18,990 nt of DNA from Vitrella brassicaformis CCMP3155 (taxonomy: Eukaryota > Protista > Chromerida). The DNA lies in NCBI GenBank assembly GCA_001179505.1, contig CDMY01000804.1:1-18990 (forward strand), in the 5' to 3' direction. Shown piece after piece: positions 2,165 through 18,432 of this stretch. Each line of letters starts with the position of its first letter. Positions within the stretch are counted from its first letter, which is position 1. Position numbers and translations under genes: made by a program. Below the pieces are notes generated by a model. That model was not told the origin of the DNA. It did no database searches and was given only the letters and a program-made list of their open reading frames with translations.

Positions 2165-2375
2165 CCCATCACACTGCAGCTCATGAGATCAACTGCAGAT
2201 CCAGACAGACACACACATTCATTCATCTTTTGCACCTGCTTGTCTGACATGTTGTTCACCGCCTATTGACGAGTTCTCCTTTGCAGTTTCTCCCGTTTTC
2301 CCTTCCTGCGCGAGCTTGAATTGCATGCTCAGCTTGCAGATCTCCCCCCTCGGATGCTCCACCGAAGGCCCATTG

Positions 2376-5300
2376 ATGGCCGCTGTGTCCGCACGCCGCC
2401 TGAGCTCTGCCAAGCCGCTGCTCTTCAATGCTCAGACGCTCGAAAGATCTGTTGGCATCACATCGTTCGCCTGCCGTGACGCAGGTATGGACGCGTTGCT
2501 CATGCTGCACGCAAAGGAAGCAGCAATCCCATGCATTCGAATGCATGCACTCGGTCTCTGCTGGTGTTTTCTCTTTCTCTGTGTGTGTTTGTGTGTGTGT
2601 GCGCGCAGATGGCTTCGATGGCGTGCTGGACGCGGCAAGGCAGCCGAGGGACTACATGGTAACTCACCAGTGCAAGATCTATGGCTGTTGCTCAGTGCGA
2701 TTCATTGCAGCTGAATGAGGTAGACCGTGAGGGCCGTTTGGTGCAGCTGTTGAGCCTGGAGGACTCCCTCTACCGCCTCCCACCACGCAACCCAAAACAG
2801 CCTAACCTCACATTCACACTGTACGGCACACACACACATAGAAAGCCATCCACGAACATACGCAGGGGATGAGTCGACCAGATCATCCATGTATCTGCGC
2901 AGGTACCGTAGTGGTCTGGAGGTCTACACGACGCTCAAGGCCATCAGCTACGTGTGCGACGTCCCCTACCCCCATCTGCGTGTGGCTGGCCAGCTGGGCC
3001 CCCCCACCCAGGGCATATCTGTGCAGTCTGTGATAGCAAAGAAGGTCTCCCGACAGGAGCTGCTGCCGTTAGTGGAGCAGCTGAGCGAGCGGACGGACCT
3101 CAGGTGCGGCAACTTCGACTACACCGTGACCGACGAGTTGGGCGACGGCCACAGTGGGGGTGAGAGGGGCGTCTACCGGCTGTCGGCTGCTTTGAGGCGT
3201 GTGTCACCGAGTGCTGAAAGTAAGGTGGCCGAGATGGTCACTCAGATCTCTCAAGTGGGCTTCCTCAACTACTATGGTACGTCGGTGGACAGCCAGCCAT
3301 CCATCCATTGCACAGCCGACTTGCCAATCGCTCACAATCGCGTTCTCACCGATGGATATGTGTGTGTGGATAATGCAGGTTCTCGATATTTTGGCCGGAG
3401 TGATGTGAAACGGCATGAGGTGGGCCTGGCGGTGCTGCAGGGCGACTGGCGAAAAGCCGTCGGCCTGCTCATTGGAACCAACAGGTGGGTACGTGCGTGG
3501 GTTCCCGGGTGGACTCGACTCACACCAGTCAGGGATCGGGGGGAGTGACGCACGAACGGGCAGCCGGCTCGCTCTCAGGCCTCCCTGCGTGCACCCACTG
3601 GGGATGGGAGGGGAGGGTGATTACGCGAGCCAAGAGAGAGGCTAGGGCCACCGGGCTCCCAGCGCCCCTTTTAGACACGTGTGCATGACAACAGGGGTCT
3701 AGAAGGGCTCGGACACCTTTGTGGACTGTCTGTGCTCTTTATGTATGCAGGCGAGAGGATTCCCCGACGTTTGAGGCGTGGCAGGCGTTCCAGAAGGGAC
3801 AAATGGTATGGCTGGTCAGCTCCGAGGAGAAGGCTCCATGTGTCCATGTCCTAGAAGTGGTGATCCATCCACCTGTCACTGGTTGTGTGAGGATGTCACA
3901 GAAAGACTGCCTCTCCCTGTTGCCCGACACGTGCCCCAACCTCCGGGAGATGATTCTCACACTCATCAAGACAGGGTAAGCAGATAACGCAAAAGCACAA
4001 GTCGCCTCCTCATTTGTGTCCGTGTGTTGTGTCTGTCTGTGTGCTGTGTGTCAGCGATGCGAGGGAGGCGTACATGTCACTGCCTGCGGTCGTGCGCCGG
4101 CAGCACATGTCGGCCATCGGCAAGTTCGCATTCAACCTGGCCGCGGATTTCAGAGTTGGCCGGTACGCATAACAACCCCGCGAGTGGCGTGAACCGTGCA
4201 TAATCCTGTCCGTGTGGTTGTCAGTATGGGCCACAAGGTCCTCCCTGGAGACTTTGTGCGGTCACCCGCAGCACCTGGAGGGGTCAGTGAAGCAACACAA
4301 GACAGAAGGGCACAGTGTGCAACGCAACCTACCTTTCTGTGATGGCTGGCTGGCTGTATGTGTGTGTCATTCATTTGTCAGGTGAGTATGGTGCAGGTGG
4401 AGGACATCAAGAAGAAGATGTGGCGTCTGGAGGACGTGTTGCTGCCGGTGCTGGGCTCGGGGGTGGACCTCCCAGACAATGCTGTGGCCCAATTCTACAG
4501 ATCCATCTTCGACAGATTCGACCTCTCGCCACAAGCACTCACGGTCAATAGGACGAGAATGCAGCCACAGTACAGGCATTCTTGTATCGGGCTGTTTCCT
4601 TCTGGCATACTGCAGGTTCCCTCTAAGCCAGAGCTGGCTGTCACGGGTTTCTACAGGTGAGTACATCAAGTACGCTGACTGTCCACACACACACACACAC
4701 ACGCATCGTGTGTGTGTGTCTCTAGGCCGGCTGTGAGCATACCGCGCGAGATCCAGTGGGACATGGTGCACTACCAGCAGCCACACACACACACCCACGA
4801 GGCCCCCGACGGCGACAATGCAGGCAGCCCCCCCGCCCCGGTGCCCCTCCTGCTGTGTGGCCTGCAGCGGCTCAAGGCACTCAGGAGGACGACCATCACC
4901 GAGGAGGGTCATGATAATGAGATGGCAGACGCTGCCACAAGTGGTACGCAAGAGAGAGCGCATGGCCACATAGCAGGCAGGCAGGCAGGCGGACGGATCG
5001 CAGTACGTGTGCTCTCTGCATGTGTGTAGATGCGGCTTCCGACGACTGTATGTTGCCCCCTGACGTGCCCGACTTCGACAGTCCCGGCGGTGCCGACGGT
5101 GGTGTTGTGGGTGACGACTTCGCTCGCCCGTCGGACGGCTCTGCAACAGCCGACGCCTCGTCAGGCAGGGGCGGCAGGGGAGGGGGCGGGAGAAGAAGCA
5201 TCAGGCAAAAGGTAAGTACGACAATAAGATCTCTCGGGTGGTATGCAGCCTTGTTCGTGCCTTACGTTTGTGTGTGCAGCGTCAGCAAGACACGGCGCTG

Positions 5301-5497
5301 CGTATTCGCGCGACGCTCGACAGACACGCAGATGGTCAGAGAGAGGGGCAAGACATTTGTGGGATGTGCGCGAGTGTGAGTGTGTTTACGTGTTTGCGTG
5401 TGTGTTGACAGGTATGATGTTCTTACGTGAGCTGCTGCATCGTGATGTCTCGGAGTTCGATGTGTCGGCCGATAAGATATCTGACAAGCTGCTGTGA
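2376..5497 (+). CDS. PUS7: TruD/PUS7-family pseudouridine synthase-like protein with degenerate catalytic motifs, ~15 exons, ~595 aa
   Basis: Phase-consistent exons: 2376-2484, 2609-2658, 2711-2820, 2903-3276, 3379-3484, 3751-3805, 3902-3975, 4055-4162, 4225-4282, 4382-4543, 4616-4656, 4726-4943, 5030-5211, 5280-5334, 5412-5497. TruD landmarks appear in order: VGITSF, FDGVL..DYMLNEVDREG, LTFTLYRSG, GFLNYYG, LPGDFV, LEDVLLPVLG..LPDN, VTGFYR, FLRELL. An upstream in-frame ATG at 2325 is an alternative start. Confidence 0.85.
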
Positions 5498-5695
5498 TGT
5501 CGCTGGCTGCATGAATTGGCTGACACTAAATCACATTGGATGAATGTACAGACACAAATTGAGAGCAACGATTAAGTATAGGCAGGCGAGGCAGGCCTTA
5601 TGTCCACACACATACACACATACACACACGTCCCCCAGAGCGCCACAAACCGGCAGACAGCAATGCGATGAGCCCATGTCGATGTGTTTATCTAG

Positions 5696-6450
5696 CTATT
5701 GTTTGACCGGCACCTGCTCTTCCTCCACACTGACCCCCAGCTGCTGCAGCCCCTGCTTGGATGTGGGCCCTATCTCAGCGTTGCTCATGAGCTGCTTGGA
5801 CACCTGGGCGCAGAACGAGCCAGGCGACTGGTCCGCCTGCCCGACTCCACCATCTTGGCCAGTGTGTCCCGCACAGGAAAGTCATCGGGCATGTTCATCT
5901 CGTCCAGCAGCTCGCTGAGGTGCTCCAACTCCGCCTTGCGGTCCGAGGCGTGCTGGGGGTGCGCCTTGAAGTATTGTTGCAGCTCCTTCTCGCAGGCCTT
6001 CTTGAGCTTCTCCTCTATCCGCTTGGTCACCTGGGCCAAACTCAGCTGGTGCTTGTGCTGAGAGGTGTCCCGCAGACTGGTCGACTGCTCGGTCAGCGCC
6101 GTCTGGCCGTCGAGGGGCGAGGGATTGCTGCCCTCGGTGCGTGGGGGGCCGTCGGGCTCATCTGAGTCGGGGTTGGCCTCCACCAGGTCCGGCCAGGCGA
6201 TTTCGCTCTCCTGCTGTGCCTGGGCGCCCTCCTGCATCATTGCAGTGGCCTGGTCGGATGCATCCACAGTGAAGGAGGTGCCGGGAGAGGCGGCTGCGTC
6301 CTCTGCAGTGTCGCTGTTGGTCAGGGATTGGTGAAGGGCCTGCTGCGCTCGCTCCACATCGATGAGACTCCTGCGGGTCGCTGATGCTGGGGTGGGGCCC
6401 AGAAAGAGCCACACAAGGCTGACGCAAAGGACGAGGGAGCGAAACAACAT
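5696..6450 (-). CDS. Predicted secreted protein of unknown function (signal peptide, acidic low-complexity middle, helical C-terminal part); 3' end needs a -1 frameshift or a short intron near 5840
   Basis: The ATG at 6450 gives MLFRSLVLCVSLVWLFLGPTPASA|TRR, a classic hydrophobic signal peptide with A-x-A. The intronless frame runs to a stop at 5785. A GC3-rich, protein-like reading (ADQSPGSFCAQVSKQLMSNAEIG...PVKQ*) continues in another frame to the TAG at 5696-5698. Confidence 0.7.
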
Positions 6451-6543
6451 CGCGAACGGGAGGGTACCAAAGGAAGGCGGCCCCACGGGGGGGCCGTTTC
6501 GCGACCGGCGATCGTTCCCTCTTCCCCCCCCTCTCTCGCAAGA

Positions 6544-8990
6544 ATGGCCGCCTCTTCCAACGCCGAGGTGCTTGCTGCATTGACCCTGACCACTGACGAC
6601 GGGAAGCTGAATGTCAGGCTGGGACTGGAACACCTCAAGATAGTCGTTAAGGAGTACGCCAAGAAGGACCCCAAAGTCCGCACCTCAAACGAGATCCAGG
6701 TAGGTAGATGTGCCGCCCGCAACTGATCTGCAGACACAATTGGTATCGTGTCCTGCAGGCGATTGGAGCATGGCTGAATCAGCCTGGTTTGCTGGCCACC
6801 CTGCGCGAGGAGACGAGATTGGAGTGTGGTGCCAAGTGTTACTACAAGAGGATAAGGGCGGGGAAGGCCCTTGACAAGACACTCCTGCAGAAGTATGCTG
6901 TGGTCGTTATCGGTACGCATGTCCATCAGAATTGCCGGTGACGGCCGTGTGCGTGTATCTTCAGAGGGCCTGCTCGCCCAGTTTCAGCATTCGATGGCGC
7001 CTGAAGTGCCCTCCTTCTCACGCTTCAGACCTCCAGGCACACCATCAGAAGCATCGTCGGCAGAAGGCATGCAGCCACACGCACGCACACAGACAAGAGC
7101 ACGAGGATATGATGTCCCGCGTGCAGGGTCTGCATCTGTATCTTCGTCTTCCGTGTCCTCTCCGTCTGAGAGGCGGCTGCTCGCTCTGGCGCCCCCGGAC
7201 CCCAGGCGGCAGGAGATGGGATACCTGGGGCTCGATCTCGACGAGGCGCTCAAAAAAGCCGTGCGTGTGTGGAGATCGGGTGAGGGAAGGAGACACGACT
7301 GAGACACATTTATGGCTCCGTGTCTTTCTTATGCATCATGTGTCAGGGACCTTGCTGCTGTTTCCATCACTGCTGCCAAAAGCGTCTCGGGAGAACACTG
7401 GGGTGGGGGTGCGCCGCAAGCAGGTGGTGGTTGAGGAAGAGGCGATTAGAAGGCAGCAGACGGTGGAAAAGACCAAGGCGAGAGAAGGTATGGACGCATG
7501 GGTGTCTGTCTCATGCTGCTCAGGCAGACGCGAATGCTCGTGTCCTTTTGCATTTGTTGCTGGGCAGGATCGCGTTCTCCGGCTGTGGGTGTCGGCGAGG
7601 CACCGCAAATACTTGGAAGCGGCAAAGCTGACAGACCCCCCGCATCACGACCGGTAAGCTAAGGCAGCACAGCCAAGGACATGACCTTCGTCCGTATGTC
7701 TCTGCGTGTGATCCTGTCAGGTGTTTGTTGGTGGTTCAGGCGAGAGTGACGATGCGGCCCGCGCCAAGTGTTTCCCCACGGCGCTACCGGCATGGTACAA
7801 TGTTGAGTCCTACCTCTGGATCGCACTCACACACAACGACCTTATCCTGCTGCCATACGAGGCACGCTACACGCCTCAAGGAAGAAGAAAAGGACAGCCA
7901 CACCGCCATTTCATTTCGATTTTGGTGCAGGTGTTGGGTCAGAGTTTGAAGATCGAGCGTGCACAGGAGCAGAAGAGGCGAAGGGCCTTTACCGTTATGG
8001 CCCTGCCGCTGCAGATCCGCCGCCTTGTGCGCGAATCCCACATGGAGAGGCTGATGACCACTTTTCAGTACCAGTCACTGACCAGGGGCAGACTGCTGGT
8101 CAGAGAGGGACAAATCAGCAGCACCCTGTTCCTCGTCCTGTCGGGGCAGGTGCGCTTCTCGGCCACGGGGCGCACAGCCACAACCCTCTCCCAGACGCCC
8201 ATGCACCAGCTGCTGTCACTCCCACAACGCACTCTCGCTCGCCCGGTCTCGAGAGCCGACACACATGTCACAGATGTCACGGTCAAGGATGCAGAGGTGA
8301 GCAGCGCACTGGGCAGCAGCAGCAGGGCACTGGGCGGCACATGGGGCTCGGCAGCTCTGCAGTCGGAGGCTCAGATGGCTGCCGATCGGCCTGTGAGTGC
8401 GTCCGAGGGCGGCGCTGTGGTGATGGGTGGCGAGGAGCTGGGAGAGGCGGAGGGGATGGAGTTCAAAGCTGTCGAGACACACAAAGGGGTGCCTGGGTGC
8501 TCTTGGCTGGTGGGCAAGGGCGTGTGGGTGGGCTGCAGGGGGTTGCTGTCCATACCTGAGCTGTTCACTGTCCACACCGGTAAGCCAACTTGACACAACA
8601 ACACAGTCACCACACACGTTGCCCCTGAGTGTGTGTGTGTTTGTGTTTGTGTTTGTGTGTCTGCACATGCATGCAGAGACATCGGTGGTGGAGCTGTTGA
8701 TGTGTTCTTGCCACGACTTCCTGGACCAGTGTGGATCGATGGGCGCGTCGACAGGCCAGGACCTCCCCACCAAGCTTAACAGTGGCGAGGAGGCCCGGAC
8801 GGTGTGGGCCCTCAGCAACATCCAAGGACACGTGGCCACGGCTCCTCAGCTGAGCATCCCCCGGCTGACGCTGCTGGAGCCGCCCCCGTGTGTGGTGCAG
8901 GAGATGCAGCGGTACCTCGACCTCACCTCTTGGCGGCCGCCTAAACCGCCATACAAGAGGGGCACCGACCTCATGCAGGCTGAGAGCTGA
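6544..8990 (+). CDS. Multi-exon protein with a degenerate cyclic-nucleotide-binding (cNMP/CAP_ED-like) domain
   Basis: ATG 6544 (MAASSNAEVL) is followed by phase-consistent exons with GT-AG introns, for example 6700-6758. The segment FQYQSLTRGRLLVREGQISSTLFLVLSGQVRF (~8060-8160) matches the start of the cNMP-binding beta-roll pattern. The last clear exon ends MQAES* at 8990. Some internal junctions and the true 3' end are uncertain. Confidence 0.6.
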
Positions 8991-9242: not shown

Positions 9243-11260
9243 TCAGTGTCCTTTCATCTGAGACGCAAACAAATGGCTTGCACAGCGCACTGCCCACAGC
9301 CATAGGCCAAATACACCAGGGAGACAGAGACACATCCACCTGTCTGCGTGTTGCTGACGATATGAGATGTAGGCACCGATTTGCTCGCCCCCCGTCATCA
9401 AGCTGTCCGCACCCTCCCTCTCCTCTCCTCCCTGGCCCTCGACGATGGCCAGTGACCTGTCGAAGTCGGCGCTGACAGTCGCCACATGCTCCGGGTCCTC
9501 GCGGCGGCGACGCCACTCGGCCTCGATGAACACTTGCAGCCAGCGCACAACACGTCGGCGACCCTCAGAGCCAGCTGCTGGGTGGCCGTCACGTCGTACG
9601 GCACGTCAGCAGCAGGTGGGGGGAACTCGAGCCGGAAGTTGCAGCACATCGGTGTGTCCTCGAGAATCGTGATGCTGAGCGAGCAGCACATACCACATAC
9701 ATACACACATGTGGACGAGATCCACACTCTTCTTCCCACCGTTCCCCCCCCCCCNNNNNNNNNNNNNNNNNNNNNNNNNNNNNNNNNNNNNNNNNNNNNN
9801 NNNNNNNNNNNNNNNNNNNNNNNNNNNNNNNNNNNNNNNNNNNNNNNNNNNNNNNNNNNNNNNNNNNNNNNNNNNNNNNNNNNNNNNNNNNNNNNNNNNN
9901 NNNNNNNNNNNNNNNNNNNNNNNNNNNNNNNNNNNNNNNNNNNNNNNNNNNNNNNNNNNNNNNNNNNNNNNNNNNNNNNNNNNNNNNNNNNNNNNNNNNN
10001 NNNNNNNNNNNNNNNNNNNNNNNNNNNNNNNNNNNNNNNNNNNNNNNNNNNNNNCCCCCCCCCCCCCCAACCTACCCCAGTTCGTCCAATGACAGGTCTC
10101 GGTAGTACAGCTCCACGGCGGCTTCCACAGCACCTTGTCGGACCTCCAGCACCTCGCCTGCGCCCCTCCCCCTCTGACGTCCCTGCCCGTCCTCGAACGG
10201 CTCACGCACCTGCATCGCGTCACTGATCGCCTGTGTGGGCAGGGTCAGTCGGTTGGCGTTGACGTAGTGCTCAGCGCCTTCTGCAAGCGGGAGGGAGTGC
10301 ATCGGCTGCTGTGAGTCGGGGCGGACCAGGCACACGTCCCATGGCTGGCGGCGGACGCCCTCGAGGAAGAGCGACCGCTTCTTGGCGGTCGAGACGGCGT
10401 CTTGCAGTAGGGGGGAGGGTGTGAGGGTGGCGCGGCCGGTCAGCTTGCCGCCGCCCGTGCGGTTGCCCAGGTCGATGGCCATGCCCACCTTGGTGCTGCG
10501 CAGGCCTGCTGTGATGACCTCGTCCCCTCGGGGAAAACGATTCCGACCTTGACCGATCCTGCGGGAAGGGTGAAAACATGGCGCTTGTTCTTCGTGATGG
10601 TCTTCGGCTGGTTGATGTAGTTGCGGTCCACATACTGCTCCGAGTACCTCGTCGCACCCGTGCCTGGAAAGAACTCCAGCCCGCGGCAGCCGGGCGCGAC
10701 GGGGTGGGGGGGAGGAATGCGTTGCTGGTGACGTGATCGGTGCAGACGAAGCCAAGGGCGTAGGCCGCGCGGTGCGCACGGACACGACGACTAGCATGAC
10801 AGCCAGCAGGTCCAGCAGCTCACCGGCCACGTCGATCCGCTCATCTTGTCTCTCGATTTCGTCTTTGCTGTTGGTGTTGGGGTAGTCCTTGGCGATTGCG
10901 GGCACGGCGAAGCCAGTCCGGACGAGGCCAGTCAGTGTAACGTAGTGCTCATTGTCTGCACACACACACACACACACTCACACTCACACACACGCACGCG
11001 CACACACGAAGAGAGGGCGATGAGATGAATGGGCAAGTGCTGCGGGGACCCACCCACCTACCGAGGTACTCCATGGGGACGACAAGGCAGTCCCTTGGCT
11101 CCTATCCGGCCATGGTCAGCTGCCCCCTGAGAGGGGCGTCAGCGTACGGCATGGGGGAGGGGACGCTCCGCCAGAGCTGTGGGTCTGAGCCGATTGTTGT
11201 TTTGATGTAGTTGAGCCGACTGCTTTCCTGCCGGGCATCTATTTGTCCATGCTGCTCCAT
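9243..11260 (-). pseudogene. Disrupted gene of unknown family (3+ exons; in-frame TAG plus four -1 frameshifts): pseudogene or low-quality assembly
   Basis: Exon 1 is 11260-11062 (MEQHGQID...MAG*EPRDCLVVPMEYL, with TAG at 11102-11104). It is followed by intron 11061-10956 and exon 2 from 10955 to ~10075 (donor GTAGGT). After the intron containing the gap, exon 3 starts near 9677 (ITILEDTPMCCNFRLEF...). Protein-like, GC3-rich reading switches frame near 10785, 10709, 10525 and 9549. The 3' end is approximate. Confidence 0.6.
9755..10054. other. Assembly gap (300 N) flanked by poly-C runs, inside an intron
   Basis: N run 9755-10054, with C11 at 9744-9754 and C14 at 10055-10068. Confidence 0.99.
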
Positions 11261-11339: not shown

Positions 11340-14300
11340 ATGCGCTACTCCATGAGGGACGATTCCAGTTCGCCAGAGGGCCCTGGGTCTGGGCTGCCTC
11401 TCACCCGCGAGGAGCAGCTGAGATTATGGCAAGAGAAAACCGGCCGGCGACGAAACACAACTTCGACCATGATCCCCAAACTCAACCCGCCTACAGACGC
11501 TGGACGCAAGAGGAGGCATGCAGCACGCCACCTCGGTAGCAGCGACGACAACGAACATCGCAACCATGAGTCAAGCCCGTTCGACAGCATTCCCACACCG
11601 CCGCAGTTCCAGTTGTTCGTCAAGCAGAGGTGGTTCGATGAGGCGCCTATGAGGGAGGATCTGCTCATCAAGTCGGAGGGAAGGTCGCCTGAGGGCTATC
11701 TCATCCCGTGCTCGTCTCCGCCGCAGCAGCCTGACCCGATGCAGCAGCTGCAGAGCGACAATGGCGACGAGCCCCTTGTGGAGGGCGGTTTTGACGGCGA
11801 GTGGGGCGAGGCCTTCCTCTCAGAAGACGACAATGACATCGGTGAGCCTATCGGCCCCTATCGTCCCTCGTCCGTGAACCTGCTGTCATCTCTCGAGGCC
11901 AAGATCACACAGGTGGCCTCACAGATCAGCAGGGTGCGCGCGCGGGCGACGGATGGGCACAGCAGCGGGGCCAAGAGCCCCGAGGGAGGCCGTGAGGTGA
12001 ATGTGGGTAAGGTCATGGGTGTGGGTGGGAGTCGGCTGGTGTCTGCTGCTGGTGGCCAGGGGAGGGGAGGTGGTGACGGCATCGATGGGGCAGGGGATGG
12101 CGAGCAGGATGGTGATGACGATGGGTGGAGGAGGCGGCGCGCCATGTCCACTGACGGCACACCCACACGGCCGCTGCGTGAGCTGCAAGGGAGGGAGGGA
12201 TGTGCACCCACAGAAATAAGGTGTATGCGTTGATTGCCCTCTCTGTGTGTGTCTCATCCATCCATCAGGTTATGGCTCCCTGCGTGAGGAGCTGGATGTG
12301 TTAGGTTCGATGGTTGATGAGCTCAAGACCGGCTTGCATCAGACCACAGACGTCATCAAACATCTACAGCGCAACGAACAACAGGTACACACGACAAAAC
12401 ATACATACACAAGTACACGTTAAACACACTATCTTCGTTTCGGTTGCAGTATCAATCGCAGCTGGAGTCGGCCCACGAGCGCATCGTAGCTCTAGAGGAC
12501 CACAACCGCGACCTCACTCACCAGTTGGCGCAGCATCGCATCGACCGTTCGTGTGTGTCGCCGTCTTCGCCCGGTCTGCAGTCGCTCGCCGAGGCACGGC
12601 TGCGGGCACGCTACGAGGCGCTGCTGAGGGAGAAGGACGAGGAGATCCAACGAATCACGAAGGCCAACAGGTGGGTGAGGGACGGGCAGTAGCTGTTGTT
12701 TGTAGGCAGACATCTGTGTCCACGCTCCGTATGTGTGTGTGCAGGGGCCCTGACGGTGAAGAGCTGACGGAGACGCTGCGTGAGATCCAAAGTGCCAACG
12801 AGGAGCTCACAACGCAGCTCGTCAAGGCTCATGCACTCAACCAGGTACAAATGAGACCACAGCTTAAATGGCCTCGTGACGGTGCGTATGCGTGTGAGTG
12901 TGTGCGTGCATGTATTGTGCAGGCGTTGCAGCGGAAGTATGTGCAGGGGGAGGAGATCCGCAGCCGCCTGCACGCCTTCGTCGAGACCCTAAGGGGACCC
13001 ATACGCGTGTTTGTCAGGTCCGCACACAACTGACCGGCTGTTCGTTTTTCTGCGAAGTGTGCGTGCGTGCGTGGATGTCCTTACTCGTGTAGGGTGCGTC
13101 CGTTGATTGGCCGTGAGGTAGTGGATCACCAGGGAGAGCCGCTGCCGATTGACGTAGGTGGCAGAGAGAGTGGAAGGTCACGTCAAGAGGTAGGTACCTC
13201 TGCTGCTTTGGTTTTCCCGAAGGTGTTGGATGTGGACGACGGCCGGTGTGTGGAGTGGTTGTGCCCAAAACACATGCAGCAGAGGGTCACGGTAGGTGAA
13301 CACACCCAAGCAAGGCAAGCGAAGCGGGTGACCGATGGATGCATCCCCTTTGTTTGTGCAGAACACGCGTCTGCTGTACCAATTCGATCGCGTGTTTAGC
13401 CCAGAGGCCACGCAGCACGAGGTGAGTGGAGTGAAGCGCTGCACTGAACCCCCTTCATGCCCGTACGTATTCTGTGTCTGCATGGGTGTATTTGTACTGC
13501 AGGTCTACGACGTGGCGTGTGCGCCTCTGATCCAGTCGGCCCTCGACGGCAAACGAGTCGCCATATTCGCTTACGGACAAACCGGCAGCGGTAACCGCCG
13601 CACGTATCCACCCACACACCCTACAGCAGCATATCAATGCTCTTGCCTTGTGTGCATCCATCCATCCATCCATCCATCAGGCAAGACGTACACCATTCTC
13701 GGCCCTGCGGGTCTGGTGGGGACCGAGGAGGGTGCGGCCATGCACAGTGCCTCGTCCATCCACGACGAGGGCCTCATTCAGCGGGCCGTGCGGCTCATCT
13801 GGGCGGAGAGGACACGCATGGAGGGCACACGCAGGGCATTCGCTGTACAGGTACGTTCAAAGTGCCGAAAGAGAGCGGTGTTCGTGGATCTTGGCTAATG
13901 TCGTTTTATGGTCTTTCTGTCAGGTTGTGTGTGTGGAGCTGTACAATGAGTCGTGTCGCGATTTGCTGACTGGGCAGGCCGCCACTGTGGCTTTGCTGCC
14001 CGGCCGCACCACGGGCCCACTTGGCAAAGTCGACGTCCGAAACATACACCCCACCGTGTATGAAGGCACCTCACGATGACCTGTGCTTCACTCTGTATGT
14101 GATGGATGGATGGCTGGGGGGATGACGTCTGTGTGTTGGTTCAGTGCCGACACGCAGGAAGAGGTGTTGGATCTCCTGCAGCAGGCGGCTGCAAACAGAC
14201 AAACCGACAGGTGAGGACAAAAACACAAGCCACACGAACGGAGGAGTCTGCATTGATCACTCATCAGGACTCATCGCAACGCCACGTCGTCCCGCAGCCA

Positions 14301-15646: not shown

Positions 15647-16853
15647 TCATCCCCGCTGCCCCCCCTGTAGGAAGCCGAAGATGCCGCCCTTTCTCCCCCC
15701 TCTGTCCAGCTGCCCAGCACCCCTCTGTCGCTTGCTGTCGTCCTCCGGTCCGCCCACGAGCAGGTCGTCGACCCGCCCTAGGCCGCCCAGCCCCATGCCA
15801 CCCAGGCCGCCCAGCACCATGTCGGAGTCGGTCTCGCCCTTGAGCTTCGTCTTGACTTTCTCAACCTCATCCTTGACCTGCACACCAGACATCACACACG
15901 GGGGGACACAACACACGCAATGTACTGACGCGGCGTGTGGGTGTGAGTGTGTTCGGTTCTGTACGTTTTTCTCTTCTGCGAGGAATTTCTGTCGCTCCTT
16001 GCTGTCGTCGGTGAGTCGGTCGTTGAGGCTCTTGAGGACCTGCTCAGTGGCCTTGCCCCACTTGCCCAGTATGTCGATCATGTCGTCCAGGTCTTGCGGC
16101 AGACGCACATCGCGACTCGCCACACCACTCACAGCAAAGCACTGCTTCTCCTGGACAATCACACACGCACACACACACACCCCACCACACACACACGCCC
16201 TTAAATAATGTGTATCCGTCGTCGTGTGTGTGGTAAAATGTCGCCTCCCTCCCTCCACCCCCGGCCATGGACGTACCTGGTCCATTTTGCCCTCGACGAG
16301 TTCGGCATAGATGGTCTCGATGATGATGTTCTCCAGCTGGCGTGTGTTGCCGGGCTCCAGGTCCAGCGCAGTCGCCAGCGCATCGAAGGTCAGCAGGGTC
16401 GAGTTGGAGGCCATGGACGTCACCGTCAGCATCCGCAGCTTGCGGTACATGGCGGGGGACAAATCGGCCGCCGGGAAGAGCTCACGGCGGGCCTTGTACT
16501 CCTCCAGGGTGCCGTAGGCGAAGAGCTTGAGGAGCGCCACCTGCTTGTGCGCCTCAGGAGACGACTTCTCGTACTCCTTGATCGACGGCAGCTCCAGCAA
16601 CTCACCGAACGTGAAGACGCCGGGGTGCTCCAGCACCTGTGTAATGAGCGCCTCCTGCACACGGACAGAACGCACGTCAGACGCAGTCACATGCGCGTGT
16701 TTGTCGACGCATCTCTGCGTCTGGGTCGGGTGTGCAGGTTTGTTGGCGTGGTTCTGCGTGTGTGTGTTTCCTCGCCCTCACCAGCGCTTTGCCCTTGACG
16801 GTCTTGCCCAGCAGGATGAACTGCTCCACCGCGGATGTGTCGAGCGAATCCAT
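15647..16853 (-). CDS. CSN7: COP9 signalosome subunit 7 (PCI domain), 4 exons, 288 aa
   Basis: Exons 16853-16782, 16654-16277, 16150-15965 and 15877-15647 are all phase 0 with GT-AG introns. The sequence VEQFILLGK...LITQVLEHPGVFTFGELLELP...LKLFAYGT...KLRMLTV...RQLENIII...GKMDQ...SRDVR is typical of CSN7, and closer to it than to eIF3m. Confidence 0.9.
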
Positions 16854-17419: not shown

Positions 17420-18432
17420 TCATACAGCTGGTTGAGCTTGGTCTTTCTTGGGTGCCTTTTGCAGGTCCCTCAGTGCCGCATCGACTTTGTCGAGCTTCTG
17501 GCGGTTAACGAAAGAGATTTCGCCGACTATCGTGCAGTGGACTTGGGAGTGGATATGCTTGCAAGACTCCTCTCTGCAAATGCGGTCACCATCGACTTTC
17601 TGCTGCTTCCCCGCTTGGCGCCGCAGCCTCTTCTCGCCACTCTCGGAGTCATCGAAGACGTGCAGGAGCGAATCGATGGTCGAGCCTCCGGTGTTATCTG
17701 CAGCCACACCGGTAAGTGCCGCCAGACACAGCCAATGTCTGCATTGCAGTTGAGCAGAAGAAGCCTTCGCGGCTCTCATGACGGTCTTGCCAGTGCCGCC
17801 CTCGCCAGTCAGGCACATGCACAAGGGCGCGATGTATTTATTGTCCCGCAGGTCTCTGTAGTGGTTCAGCAAGTGGCTGCAGATGATTCGGGACGCCCGC
17901 ATATGCTCTTCGTTCAATCGGTAACGGCTCTCCCAGCGAACAGAGAAGGTCCTGTCGTCGACCGTCTCAGGCGGCTTGAATGCGGACACCGGCTGCGCCA
18001 GCAGTCGAGTGAGGCTGGCAGCATCCATCGAGTGACCACCGTGTGTGAAGACATTCGACTCGAAGAGAAGGTACTCAGGAGGCTTGCTTCATCTGACGTG
18101 ACACGGGTGTGCCCGATTTCACTTTGCTTGTTGCGTTGCTGGAGCAGGCCATCATTGTTGCTGCGTTGTTCGTGCAGGTCATCGTTGGGCTGATCCTGGC
18201 GGCTCCCATGTGATTGACAAGCCGATTGACAGTCATCGAGGGCAGTCTTCGATAGCCCCTTTAACAGGCACATCCAATTGTATCCAGCGATGCGATATAC
18301 TTGGCGAGGCACGTCTTGAACACGGGCGCAGCAGGAGCGGCAACATGAGGGGTGCAGCCACTCTGAGTACCTGCATGTTATGGCCACGTCTGTCTTCGAG
18401 ATCTGCATGTTTTTGAGACTCTCTCTCGCCAT
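17420..18432 (-). mobile_element. Decayed PIF1-family (SF1B) helicase fragment of Helitron type, truncated after motif II
   Basis: ORF 17420-18028 reads LNEEHMRASRIICSHL...PLCMCLTGEGGTGKT (Walker A, 17783-17806), then AALTGVAADNTGGSTIDS (the PIF1 A-x-TG-x-AA-xx-IGG-x-TIHS motif), then IVGEISFV (degenerate DEISMV). Motifs III-VI and any Rep/HUH domain are not seen. The upstream ORF (ATG 18432) needs a frame change near 18030. Confidence 0.75.

What the first reader, a model, noticed from the sequence alone, without database searches (positions are those of the whole stretch)
2376..5497. Intact TruD/PUS7 paralogue with every catalytic motif degenerate: candidate pseudo-enzyme
Seen: the frame stays open across ~15 phase-consistent exons, so the gene looks maintained, yet each functional motif is altered. 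AGQLGPPTQGISVQ (from 2985) replaces A-G-x-K-D-x-x-A-x-T-x-Q, with GGC/Gly at 2997-2999 where the catalytic Asp should be, plus a 2-residue insertion. GNxF becomes GVYR, NYFGxQRFG becomes NYYGSRYFG, the AYQS..WN helix becomes AIGKFAFN, and SYAT..LRE becomes HADG..LRE. Established: TruD needs this Asp (Asp80 in E. coli TruD) for pseudouridylation. Inference: the protein keeps the RNA-binding fold for a non-catalytic job such as RNA chaperone or ribosome-assembly/structural factor.
Basis: partly seen in the sequence, partly recalled or inferred. Interest (0 to 1): 0.75.

Follow-up and report, generated by a model that had tools for sequence, protein, structure and literature searches.

The report
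Expressed dead PUS7-like gene in Vitrella
The alga Vitrella brassicaformis has an intact, spliced and transcribed 15-exon gene for a protein with the fold of the RNA-modifying enzyme PUS7/TruD but without its catalytic aspartate or most other active-site residues. It is a credible "dead enzyme" that probably only binds RNA, a kind already known from trypanosome mitochondria.

Summary
Window 2376-5497 (+) is a 15-exon GT-AG gene. Every junction appears in spliced contigs from three public runs, and exon 4 matches the genome with no differing letter. The spliced translation from ATG 2325 equals the public protein P0001, 612 aa, "TRUD domain-containing protein", Vitrella brassicaformis CCMP3155.

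It belongs to the TruD/PUS7 family:
- Pfam TruD 97 bits.
- Human PUS7 8e-23 and yeast Pus7 1.7e-21.
- Foldseek best matches are PUS7, archaeal TruD and T. brucei mt-LAF4.

Three alignments place Pro141 (3003-3005) at the catalytic Asp, and residues 127-157 hold no acidic residue. The NxF, QRFG, YQSYxWN and YATM motifs are also replaced, and the eukaryotic R3H-like insertion is missing.

The reading frame looks selected: 0 internal stops against 16 and 22 in the other frames, and GC3 0.73 against 0.545 in introns. The branch is about six times longer than those of canonical PUS7s, and no closer relative was found.

A non-catalytic RNA-binding role is the best reading, but its nature is inferred. 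Dead TruD-family proteins are already known (kinetoplastid mt-LAF4). I could not check whether a canonical PUS7 exists in this genome.

The parts
2376..5497 (+). TruD/PUS7-like gene with 15 exons. The public model P0001 starts at ATG 2325 (612 aa). From ATG 2376 the protein is 595 aa.
   Evidence: spliced translation identical to P0001; spliced RNA-type contigs.
2376..2441 (+). N-terminal leader, residues 18-39 of P0001. It has three basic residues, no acidic residue, is rich in Ala/Ser/Leu, and has an RRL|SS (R-3-like) site. This is a possible mitochondrial presequence (weak inference).
   Evidence: composition. RNA contigs start at 2335-2341.
2611..2719 (+). N-terminal active-site strand, GFDGVLDAARQPRDYM|LNE, spanning exons 2-3. 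Yeast K61 aligns with D61 (2629-2631) next to a 2-residue insertion, F67 with Y69, and E71 with E73, which is kept.
   Evidence: HMMER alignment to 7mzv; MAFFT A1; codon map.
2821..2902 (+). Intron 3. The 18-residue linker SLEDSLYRLPPRNPKQPN, encoded just upstream in exon 3, replaces the insertion domain I (R3H-like, 100 aa or more) of eukaryotic PUS7.
   Evidence: Alignment A1, columns 100-335. No PUS7L_N or R3H Pfam hit.
2985..3026 (+). Degenerate catalytic loop AGQLGPPTQGISVQ (A135-Q148), standing where AGTKDKRAxTxQ should be. Pro141 (3003-3005) sits at the catalytic Asp position (yeast D256, human D294).
   Evidence: AF2 pLDDT is below 50 for residues 136-145.
3156..3182 (+). Equivalent of the NxF motif, GGERGVYRL (G192-L200), with a 4-residue insertion and neither Asn nor Phe.
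3267..3395 (+). NYYG|SRYFG in place of NY[FY]GxQRFG, split by intron 4 (3277-3378). Q becomes R234 and R becomes Y235.
   Evidence: exon 5 alone hits Pfam TruD, E 4e-4.
4110..4136 (+). SAIGKFAFN in place of H[AG]YQSYxWN.
4544..4615 (+). Intron 10. It is 72 nt, in frame and stop-free, so it looks like coding sequence in a plain ORF scan, but transcripts remove it.
   Evidence: joint 4542>4615 in X1, X6, X7.
4778..5285 (+). Lineage-specific insertion, residues 451-568, mostly predicted disordered (pLDDT below 50) and acidic. It begins at a (CA)n repeat that codes HTHTH.
5164..5196 (+). RGG box GRGGRGGGGRR inside the insertion, followed by the basic stretch SIRQKRQQ. A likely accessory RNA-binding element (inference).
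   Evidence: Sequence.
5325..5431 (+). C-terminal motif HADG|MMFLRE in place of xxYATMxLRE. The M-x-x-R-E part is kept.

Best explanation
This is a transcribed, selectively maintained member of the eukaryotic TruD/PUS7 pseudouridine-synthase family that has lost catalysis, i.e. a pseudo-enzyme.

Shown:
- It keeps the V-shaped TruD fold and 41 of the 76 positions that are invariant in the canonical PUS7s aligned here. Most of the kept ones are glycines and hydrophobic or aromatic residues outside the catalytic motifs.
- Its uridine pocket is dismantled: catalytic Asp to Pro141, the NxF motif gone, Q-R of QRFG to R-Y, and YQSYxWN and YATM replaced.
- The eukaryotic R3H-like insertion domain is deleted.
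- A disordered insertion carrying an RGG box has been gained.

Inferred: the protein still binds RNA in the cleft between the catalytic and TRUD domains, helped by the RGG box, but cannot isomerise uridine. It would then act as an RNA chaperone, placeholder or scaffold in the assembly of a ribonucleoprotein. The best precedent is ribosome biogenesis, as for kinetoplastid mt-LAF4. Which RNA it binds and in which compartment are unknown. The short basic leader hints at mitochondria, while the RGG and basic stretch hint at the nucleolus.
For: Gene structure and expression:
- Exon-exon joints appear in contigs of runs X1, X6 and X7, and exon 4 is unchanged.
- The spliced translation equals public protein P0001.

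Family and fold:
- Pfam TruD 97 bits, E 1.5e-27.
- phmmer against PDB: human PUS7 8e-23, yeast Pus7 1.7e-21.
- Foldseek: 7mzv 2.6e-20, 5kkp 4.7e-20, 1z2z 1.5e-15, mt-LAF4 6yxy_ED 1.8e-14.
- The ESM Atlas model has TM 0.71-0.72 to TruD clusters.

Loss of active-site residues:
- Searches show the substitutions.
- In yeast Pus7, D256A gives no activity and N305A/F307A lower the rate by up to 50,000-fold (PMC8794802). Human D294A is inactive (PMC8599909).

Selection on the frame:
- 0 internal stops in 595 codons against 16 and 22 in the other frames. The chance probability is 5e-9.
- GC1/2/3 are 0.64/0.46/0.73, against intron GC 0.545.
- All 14 introns keep GT..AG.

Precedents for RNA binding without catalysis:
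- D256A Pus7 binds RNA at 60 nM (PMC8794802).
- mt-LAF4 is a TruD-family, probably inactive, mitoribosome assembly factor (PMC7957421).
Against: - No activity or binding was measured.
- The AF2 model is poor in exactly the three active-site loops (pLDDT below 50 at 136-145, 186-195 and 233-240). I had no coordinates, so I could not see whether D61, E73 or E194 reach the pocket.
- No orthologue was found, so conservation (dN/dS) is unmeasured. A very long branch (9.5 against a median of 1.5) also fits relaxed constraint.
- The run types are 'guessed RNA', although spliced contigs imply RNA.
- The localisation cues conflict and are weak.
Confidence: 0.65

Rival explanations
1. It is specifically an organellar (mitochondrial) ribosome assembly or structural factor. 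It would be a convergent counterpart of kinetoplastid mt-LAF4, covering immature, fragmented rRNA. This is a narrower version of the best explanation.
For: mt-LAF4 is a TruD-family protein with a disrupted active site bound to the pre-mtLSU (PMC7957421; PDB 6yxy, 7am2). The first hit of the ESM Atlas feature search is a Euglenozoan TruD cluster of 614 aa, score 0.93 against 0.92 for the next (a lead only). The leader from Met18 is basic, has no acidic residue and carries an R-3-like site.
Against: P0001 is much closer to canonical PUS7 (84 bits) than to the Leishmania mt-LAF4 homologue (30 bits), so there is no sign of common descent. The leader is very short if the protein starts at Met18. 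No targeting predictor was available. No TruD-like chain occurs in any PDB entry other than the kinetoplastid intermediates and the canonical enzymes, Toxoplasma mitoribosome entries included. An RGG box is more typical of nuclear or nucleolar proteins.
Confidence: 0.2
2. It is still an active pseudouridine synthase with a rewired active site, using another carboxylate such as D61, E73 or E194 as the nucleophile.
For: E73 (yeast E71) is retained. An Asp sits at or near the K61 position. Tyr69 and Tyr198 could stack on the base. The active-site loops are modelled with low confidence, so their geometry is open.
Against: The catalytic Asp on this loop is universal in all pseudouridine synthase families (PMC8599909, PMC8794802). 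Here the loop holds Pro-Pro and a 2-residue insertion, with no acidic residue in 31 positions. The NxF and Q-R motifs are lost as well. The Pfam TruD model fails to align its first 134 positions, which are the ones that hold the catalytic motif.
Confidence: 0.07
3. It is a transcribed gene drifting toward loss, with relaxed or no selection, and has no function of its own.
For: The terminal branch is very long. No orthologue was detected anywhere. A microsatellite-derived HTHTH stretch and a long low-complexity insertion lie inside the coding sequence.
Against: At about 27% identity to canonical PUS7, neutral drift would long since have broken a 1.8-kb frame and 28 splice sites. Yet there is no internal stop (P 5e-9), the codon periodicity is strong, all splice sites are canonical, and many structural core residues are kept along the whole length as far as the C-terminal LRE. 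Spliced transcripts occur in three runs.
Confidence: 0.07
4. It is a non-catalytic partner or regulator of an active modification enzyme, in the manner of RPUSD3 with RPUSD4/TRUB2. It would supply RNA binding or specificity rather than acting alone.
For: Human RPUSD3 has Gly at the catalytic Asp position and is nevertheless required for mitochondrial pseudouridylation (discussed in bioRxiv 10.1101/2023.02.23.529727).
Against: TruD/PUS7 enzymes are not known to need partners (my own knowledge). No partner is identified, and the presence of an active PUS7 in this genome was not established here.
Confidence: 0.1

Closest known systems
Eukaryotic PUS7 (human PUS7, PDB 5KKP; yeast Pus7, PDB 7MZV)
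   Same: These are the best sequence and fold matches (E 8e-23 and 1.7e-21; Foldseek E about 1e-20). P0001 shares the catalytic-domain core, the helical TRUD insertion domain, the N-terminal GFxG...D[FY]xxNE strand, NY[FY]G..FG and the C-terminal LRE.
   Different: The catalytic Asp is replaced by Pro141. NxF, Q-R, YQSYxWN and YATM are replaced. The R3H-like insertion domain I is reduced to 18 residues. There is a private disordered acidic insertion with an RGG box. The branch is about six times longer.
Kinetoplastid mt-LAF4 (T. brucei 6YXY/6YXX/7AOI chain ED/XC; Leishmania 7AM2 chain CA)
   Same: It is a TruD-family protein of about 615 aa with a non-functional active site, and it serves a structural role on RNA (PMC7957421). 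The Leishmania catalytic loop also lacks the KD motif (alignment). It is a significant fold match.
   Different: Sequence kinship is weak (30 bits, E 1.7e-6) and no closer than between mt-LAF4 and canonical PUS7 (80 bits to profile A1), so an independent origin is likely. In mt-LAF4 the site is disrupted by an inserted beta-hairpin. Here it is lost through point replacements and 2- to 4-residue insertions. Ribosome association and mitochondrial location are unknown for the Vitrella protein.
Human RPUSD3 (RluA family) and T. brucei mt-LAF3
   Same: Both are pseudouridine-synthase homologues whose role does not need catalysis. RPUSD3 has Gly at the catalytic Asp position. mt-LAF3 carrying D211A complements fully.
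   Different: They belong to a different PUS family (RluA rather than TruD), and their mitochondrial location is documented.
Bacterial and archaeal TruD (E. coli 1SB7/1SI7/1SZW; M. mazei 1Z2Z)
   Same: The core fold is the same. Like them, P0001 has no R3H-like insertion after the second strand.
   Different: These are active enzymes with the catalytic Asp. They match P0001 only at the fold level (Foldseek 1e-8 to 1e-15). phmmer with P0001 finds none of them at E of 0.01 or better.

Membership tests
TruD/PUS7 superfamily (Pfam PF01142) | Significant match to the family HMM above the gathering score | tested here: met
   97 bits against a cutoff of 27, E 1.5e-27. Only residues 204-441 match, covering profile positions 135-383.
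TruD/PUS7 superfamily (Pfam PF01142) | TruD fold: catalytic domain plus TRUD insertion domain | tested here: met
   The twelve matches with Foldseek E of 0.001 or better are all TruD-family chains, and the best reach 1e-20. The Atlas model has TM 0.71-0.72 to TruD clusters. The core at residues 100-450 has pLDDT mostly 70-95.
Active TruD/PUS7 pseudouridine synthases | Catalytic Asp in the GxKD loop (E. coli D80, yeast D256, human D294) | tested here: not met
   Pro141 sits at that column in three independent alignments, and residues 127-157 contain no Asp or Glu.
Active TruD/PUS7 pseudouridine synthases | NxF motif (yeast N305/F307) | tested here: not met
   Residues 186-204 contain no Asn or Phe, and there is a 4-residue insertion.
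Active TruD/PUS7 pseudouridine synthases | N-terminal active-site residues K61, F67, E71 (yeast numbering) | tested here: inconclusive
   K aligns with D61, but a 2-residue insertion makes the placement uncertain. F becomes Y69, a conservative change. E73 is kept.
Active TruD/PUS7 pseudouridine synthases | Conversion of uridine to pseudouridine | not testable with these tools
   Needs a biochemical assay.
Eukaryotic PUS7/PUS7L subfamily | Eukaryote-specific insertion domain I (R3H-like) between the N-terminal strands | tested here: not met
   18 residues stand where canonical sequences have 100 or more (A1). P0001 has no PUS7L_N or R3H_PUS7L hit, whereas P0007 and P0010 do.
Kinetoplastid mt-LAF4 family | Closer sequence kinship to mt-LAF4 than to canonical PUS7 | tested here: not met
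   30.4 bits to 7am2_CA against 84.3 bits to human PUS7.
Kinetoplastid mt-LAF4 family | Mitochondrial location and binding to the pre-mtLSU central protuberance | not testable with these tools
   Only a weak presequence-like leader is available as a cue.
Pseudoenzyme (operational definition) | Intact, expressed gene in an enzyme family that lacks essential catalytic residues | tested here: met
   intact, spliced, periodic; residues lost.

The most novel reading that the evidence does not exclude
Vitrella independently converted a PUS7 copy into a non-catalytic RNA scaffold for assembling an organellar ribosome built from fragmented rRNAs. That would be a second, convergent origin of the mt-LAF4-type solution outside Euglenozoa. 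It would suggest that dead TruD folds are a recurrent answer to rRNA fragmentation or reduction.
Probability: 0.15. Interest if true: 0.6.

Novelty: new member of a known kind. Interest (0 to 1): 0.35.

Why it matters
Catalytically dead RNA-modification enzymes are emerging as RNA chaperones and ribosome-assembly placeholders; mt-LAF4, mt-LAF3 and RPUSD3 are examples. This would be a TruD-family case outside kinetoplastids, apparently of independent origin, in a free-living relative of apicomplexan parasites. It offers a natural experiment on which parts of the PUS7 fold matter for RNA binding alone. It also warns annotators that a 'TRUD domain-containing protein' need not be a pseudouridine synthase. 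Its reach is limited, because no orthologue was found in any other organism and the function is untested.

Tried and rejected
Searches of single exons:
- Exon-by-exon Pfam scans by reference found only exon 5, which hit TruD weakly (19.7 bits, below the cutoff). Exon 4, which carries the degenerate catalytic loop, hit nothing.
- phmmer of exon 4 against PDB found nothing. Single exons are too short and too diverged.

Handling of the joined model:
- I never typed or submitted the joined spliced model.
- The exhaustive search with the uninterrupted reading 2904-3482 (exon 4, in-frame intron 4, exon 5) returned the public protein P0001.
- A script showed P0001 to be identical to the spliced model. 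All whole-protein searches then used that id.

Word-index searches:
- Three searches (P0001 whole, residues 36-450, alignment A1) returned only P0001 itself among 8000 candidates.
- They did not recover even the canonical PUS7s known to be in the collection. They therefore exclude only close relatives, very roughly above half identity by my estimate.
- They say nothing about a canonical PUS7 in Vitrella or about distant orthologues.

Other attempts that led nowhere:
- The Atlas search restricted to unnamed clusters gave nothing usable.
- The look-up of encoding contigs for P0002 and P0004 gave SRA run ids but no organism, so they could not seed an alveolate-biased search.
- A search for an alternative exon coding a KD motif, by six-frame regex and by tblastn of five canonical PUS7s against the whole contig, found none. 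There is also no second TruD-like region.
- Rfam found no RNA family, so no known family (intronic snoRNAs included) in the gene or the window.
- The scan's own notes hold no other TruD/PUS7 finding in this genome.

Reading rejected: descent from a bacterial-type (organelle-derived) TruD. The missing insertion domain suggested it, but the sequence is clearly closest to eukaryotic PUS7.
Full report
**What is in the sequence**

The window is a GC-rich (about 57%), intron-dense eukaryotic contig. Reading the three forward frames between 2300 and 5560 gave a chain of GT..AG exons from ATG 2376 to TGA 5495-5497.

I laid contigs of four public runs on 2300-5600. Three runs (X1, X6, X7; studies P1, P4, P2) hold contigs from which the introns are removed. 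X6 and X7 each have a single contig of 1874-1883 nt spanning about 2339-5555. Twelve of the 14 junctions are listed as joints. Introns 1 and 11 follow from the record coordinates. All junctions agree with my model.

The contigs also revealed a 72-nt in-frame, stop-free intron (4544-4615) that plain ORF reading cannot see. Exon 4 (2903-3275) is covered with no differing letter. No alternative splice or edit restores a KD motif.

The run kinds are not on record, but spliced contigs imply RNA. Contigs cannot give expression levels or true transcript ends.

**Identity of the protein**

Only exon 5 reached Pfam TruD, and weakly (E 4e-4, 19.7 bits). Exon 4 alone found nothing in Pfam or PDB.

I then ran the exhaustive HMMER search with the uninterrupted reading 2904-3482 (exon 4, in-frame intron 4, exon 5). 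It returned ten proteins:
- P0001 at 99% identity.
- Nine canonical PUS7-type proteins at 31-43% identity (E 2.5e-6 to 5e-4). All nine carry [AS]GTKD[KR].

P0001 (612 aa) is NCBI "unnamed protein product [Vitrella brassicaformis CCMP3155]" and UniRef "TRUD domain-containing protein". Its only contig is 18,990 bases long, the length of this window. A script confirmed that the 15 exons, started at ATG 2325, translate exactly to P0001. I never typed the joined model or sent it to any search. From that point I used the id P0001.

The three RNA contigs start at 2335-2341, downstream of ATG 2325. This mildly favours Met18 as the real start.

**Family and fold**

- P0001 matches Pfam TruD at 97 bits (E 1.5e-27). 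The match covers only residues 204-441, which correspond to profile positions 135-383. The part of the model holding the catalytic motif does not align.
- phmmer against PDB finds human PUS7 (5KKP, 8e-23), yeast Pus7 (7MZV, 1.7e-21) and, weakly, the Leishmania TRUD-domain protein of a mitoribosome assembly intermediate (7AM2 chain CA, 1.7e-6).
- An AlphaFold2 model built on a shallow 8-sequence alignment has mean pLDDT 58.7. The core at residues 100-450 is well modelled.
- Foldseek's significant matches with that model (E of 0.001 or better) are exclusively TruD-family structures: yeast and human PUS7 (about 1e-20), M. mazei TruD (1.5e-15), T. brucei mt-LAF4 (1.8e-14) and E. coli TruD (1e-8).
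- The ESM Atlas's own model of this protein (pTM 0.72) aligns to TruD clusters at TM 0.71-0.72.

**The degenerate active site**

Three alignments agree that the loop AGTKD[KR]xAxTxQ is AGQLGPPTQGISVQ here. These are HMMER against human PUS7, HMMER against yeast Pus7, and MAFFT with seven canonical sequences (A1). All three put Pro141 (CCC, 3003-3005) opposite the catalytic Asp (yeast D256, human D294). That is only a different gap placement, because residues 127-157 contain no acidic residue.

Other changes:
- K61 (yeast numbering) becomes D61, beside a 2-residue insertion.
- F67 becomes Y69.
- E71 is kept as E73.
- The NxF motif is lost within GGERGVYRL, which carries a 4-residue insertion and has no Asn or Phe.
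- NY[FY]GxQRFG becomes NYYGSRYFG.
- H[AG]YQSYxWN becomes SAIGKFAFN.
- YATMxLRE becomes ADGMMFLRE.

The literature shows what these residues do:
- In yeast Pus7, D256A abolishes activity.
- N305A and F307A lower the rate up to 50,000-fold.
- K61A, F67A and E71A lower it 40- to 200-fold.
- D256A still binds RNA at 60 nM (PMC8794802).
- Human D294A is inactive (PMC8599909).

Of the 76 columns that are invariant among the canonical sequences, P0001 keeps 41. The kept residues are mostly glycines and hydrophobic or aromatic positions, and they run along the whole chain as far as the C-terminal M-x-x-R-E. Many of the losses fall in the motifs listed above.

P0001 also lacks the eukaryote-specific R3H-like insertion domain I, with 18 residues where canonical sequences have 100 or more. 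It has no PUS7L_N or R3H Pfam hit. It has its own insertion (residues 451-568, mostly pLDDT below 50, pI 4.8). That insertion starts at a (CA)n-encoded HTHTH stretch and contains the RGG box GRGGRGGGGRR, followed by a basic stretch.

**Maintained or decaying?**

- The 595-codon frame has no internal stop, against 16 and 22 in the other two frames. The chance probability is 5e-9 for this base composition.
- GC at codon positions 1/2/3 is 0.64/0.46/0.73, against 0.545 in the introns.
- All 14 introns keep GT..AG.

At about 27% identity to canonical PUS7 (canonical sequences share 33-46% with each other), neutral decay would long since have broken the frame and the splice sites. I therefore infer purifying selection on a folded product.

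Against this, the terminal branch is about six times the median (9.5 against 1.5 changes per site). No relative closer than canonical PUS7 was found in 1.84 billion representatives, although that search used only the fragment. The three word-index searches returned only the protein itself. Those word searches did not recover even known canonical PUS7s. They exclude only close relatives and are otherwise uninformative. dN/dS could not be computed.

**Mechanism**

*Shown:* a TruD fold, a dismantled uridine pocket, and an intact transcribed gene.

*Inferred:* the protein binds RNA without modifying it and works as a chaperone, placeholder or scaffold.

The closest precedent is T. brucei mt-LAF4. 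It is annotated as a TruD-family synthase with a disrupted catalytic site, and it covers immature rRNA at the central protuberance of the pre-mtLSU (PMC7957421; PDB 6YXY, 6YXX, 7AOI and 7AM2). Diplonemids also have a mitochondrial TruD-superfamily protein that co-purifies with the mtLSU (PMC10325924). In the RluA family, RPUSD3 has Gly at the catalytic position, and mt-LAF3 carrying D211A complements fully (bioRxiv 10.1101/2023.02.23.529727).

P0001 is no closer to mt-LAF4 (30 bits) than canonical PUS7s are (80 bits for profile A1). Any similarity of role would therefore be convergent.

Localisation cues are weak and they conflict. From Met18 there is a short basic leader with no acidic residue and an R-3-like site. 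The internal RGG and basic stretch is more typical of nuclear or nucleolar RNA-binding proteins (my own knowledge). No TruD-like chain occurs in the Toxoplasma mitoribosome entries or in any other PDB entry.

**Caveats**

- The three active-site loops are the low-confidence parts of the model, and I had no coordinates. I could not test whether D61, E73 or E194 reach the pocket, so a rewired active enzyme remains possible at low probability.
- I could not establish whether Vitrella also has a canonical PUS7, so "paralogue" is an expectation, not a result.
- The contig holds no second TruD-like region and no alternative KD-coding exon.
- No Rfam family matches the gene or the window.

**Verdict**

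The pseudo-enzyme reading is well supported by sequence. The proposed non-catalytic job is plausible by precedent but untested. This is a new member of a known kind (catalytically dead pseudouridine-synthase homologues), apparently an orphan in current databases. Interest is moderate.

Noticed in passing
window 2325-2375: The public gene model (P0001) starts at ATG 2325, but all three spliced RNA contigs begin at 2335-2341. The real start codon may therefore be ATG 2376 (Met18), which would expose a short basic, presequence-like N-terminus.
   Followed up: partly
window 3277-3378, 3806-3901 and 4544-4615: Introns 4, 6 and 10 have lengths divisible by three and no in-frame stop, so retaining them would keep the frame. 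Intron 4 would insert 34 residues into the NYYG|SRYFG motif. The contigs show all three spliced out.
   Followed up: partly
window 4782-4793 (also 2590-2601, 2827-2838, 4684-4719): (CA)n/(TG)n microsatellites are frequent in the introns. One lies inside exon 11, where it encodes HTHTH at the start of the disordered insertion. This looks like a repeat-seeded expansion of the coding sequence.
   Followed up: no
window 9755-10054: A run of 300 N marks an assembly gap. It explains the apparent GC dip at 9501-10000.
   Followed up: yes
window 15650-16690 (-): An open reading with PCI domain and CSN7 helical-bundle hits. It is probably part of a COP9 signalosome subunit 7-like gene.
   Followed up: partly
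window 13335-13895 (+): An exon-sized reading with a kinesin motor domain hit (P-loop region). It is part of a multi-exon kinesin gene.
   Followed up: partly
window 17423-18028 (-): A reading with a PIF1-like helicase hit (27 bits, just above the cutoff). It could be a helicase gene or a Helitron-type element fragment.
   Followed up: no
window 5788-6633 (-): A 282-aa reading with no Pfam hit whose internal Met is followed by a hydrophobic, signal-peptide-like stretch. It is an unannotated neighbour immediately downstream of the TruD-like gene, on the opposite strand.
   Followed up: no
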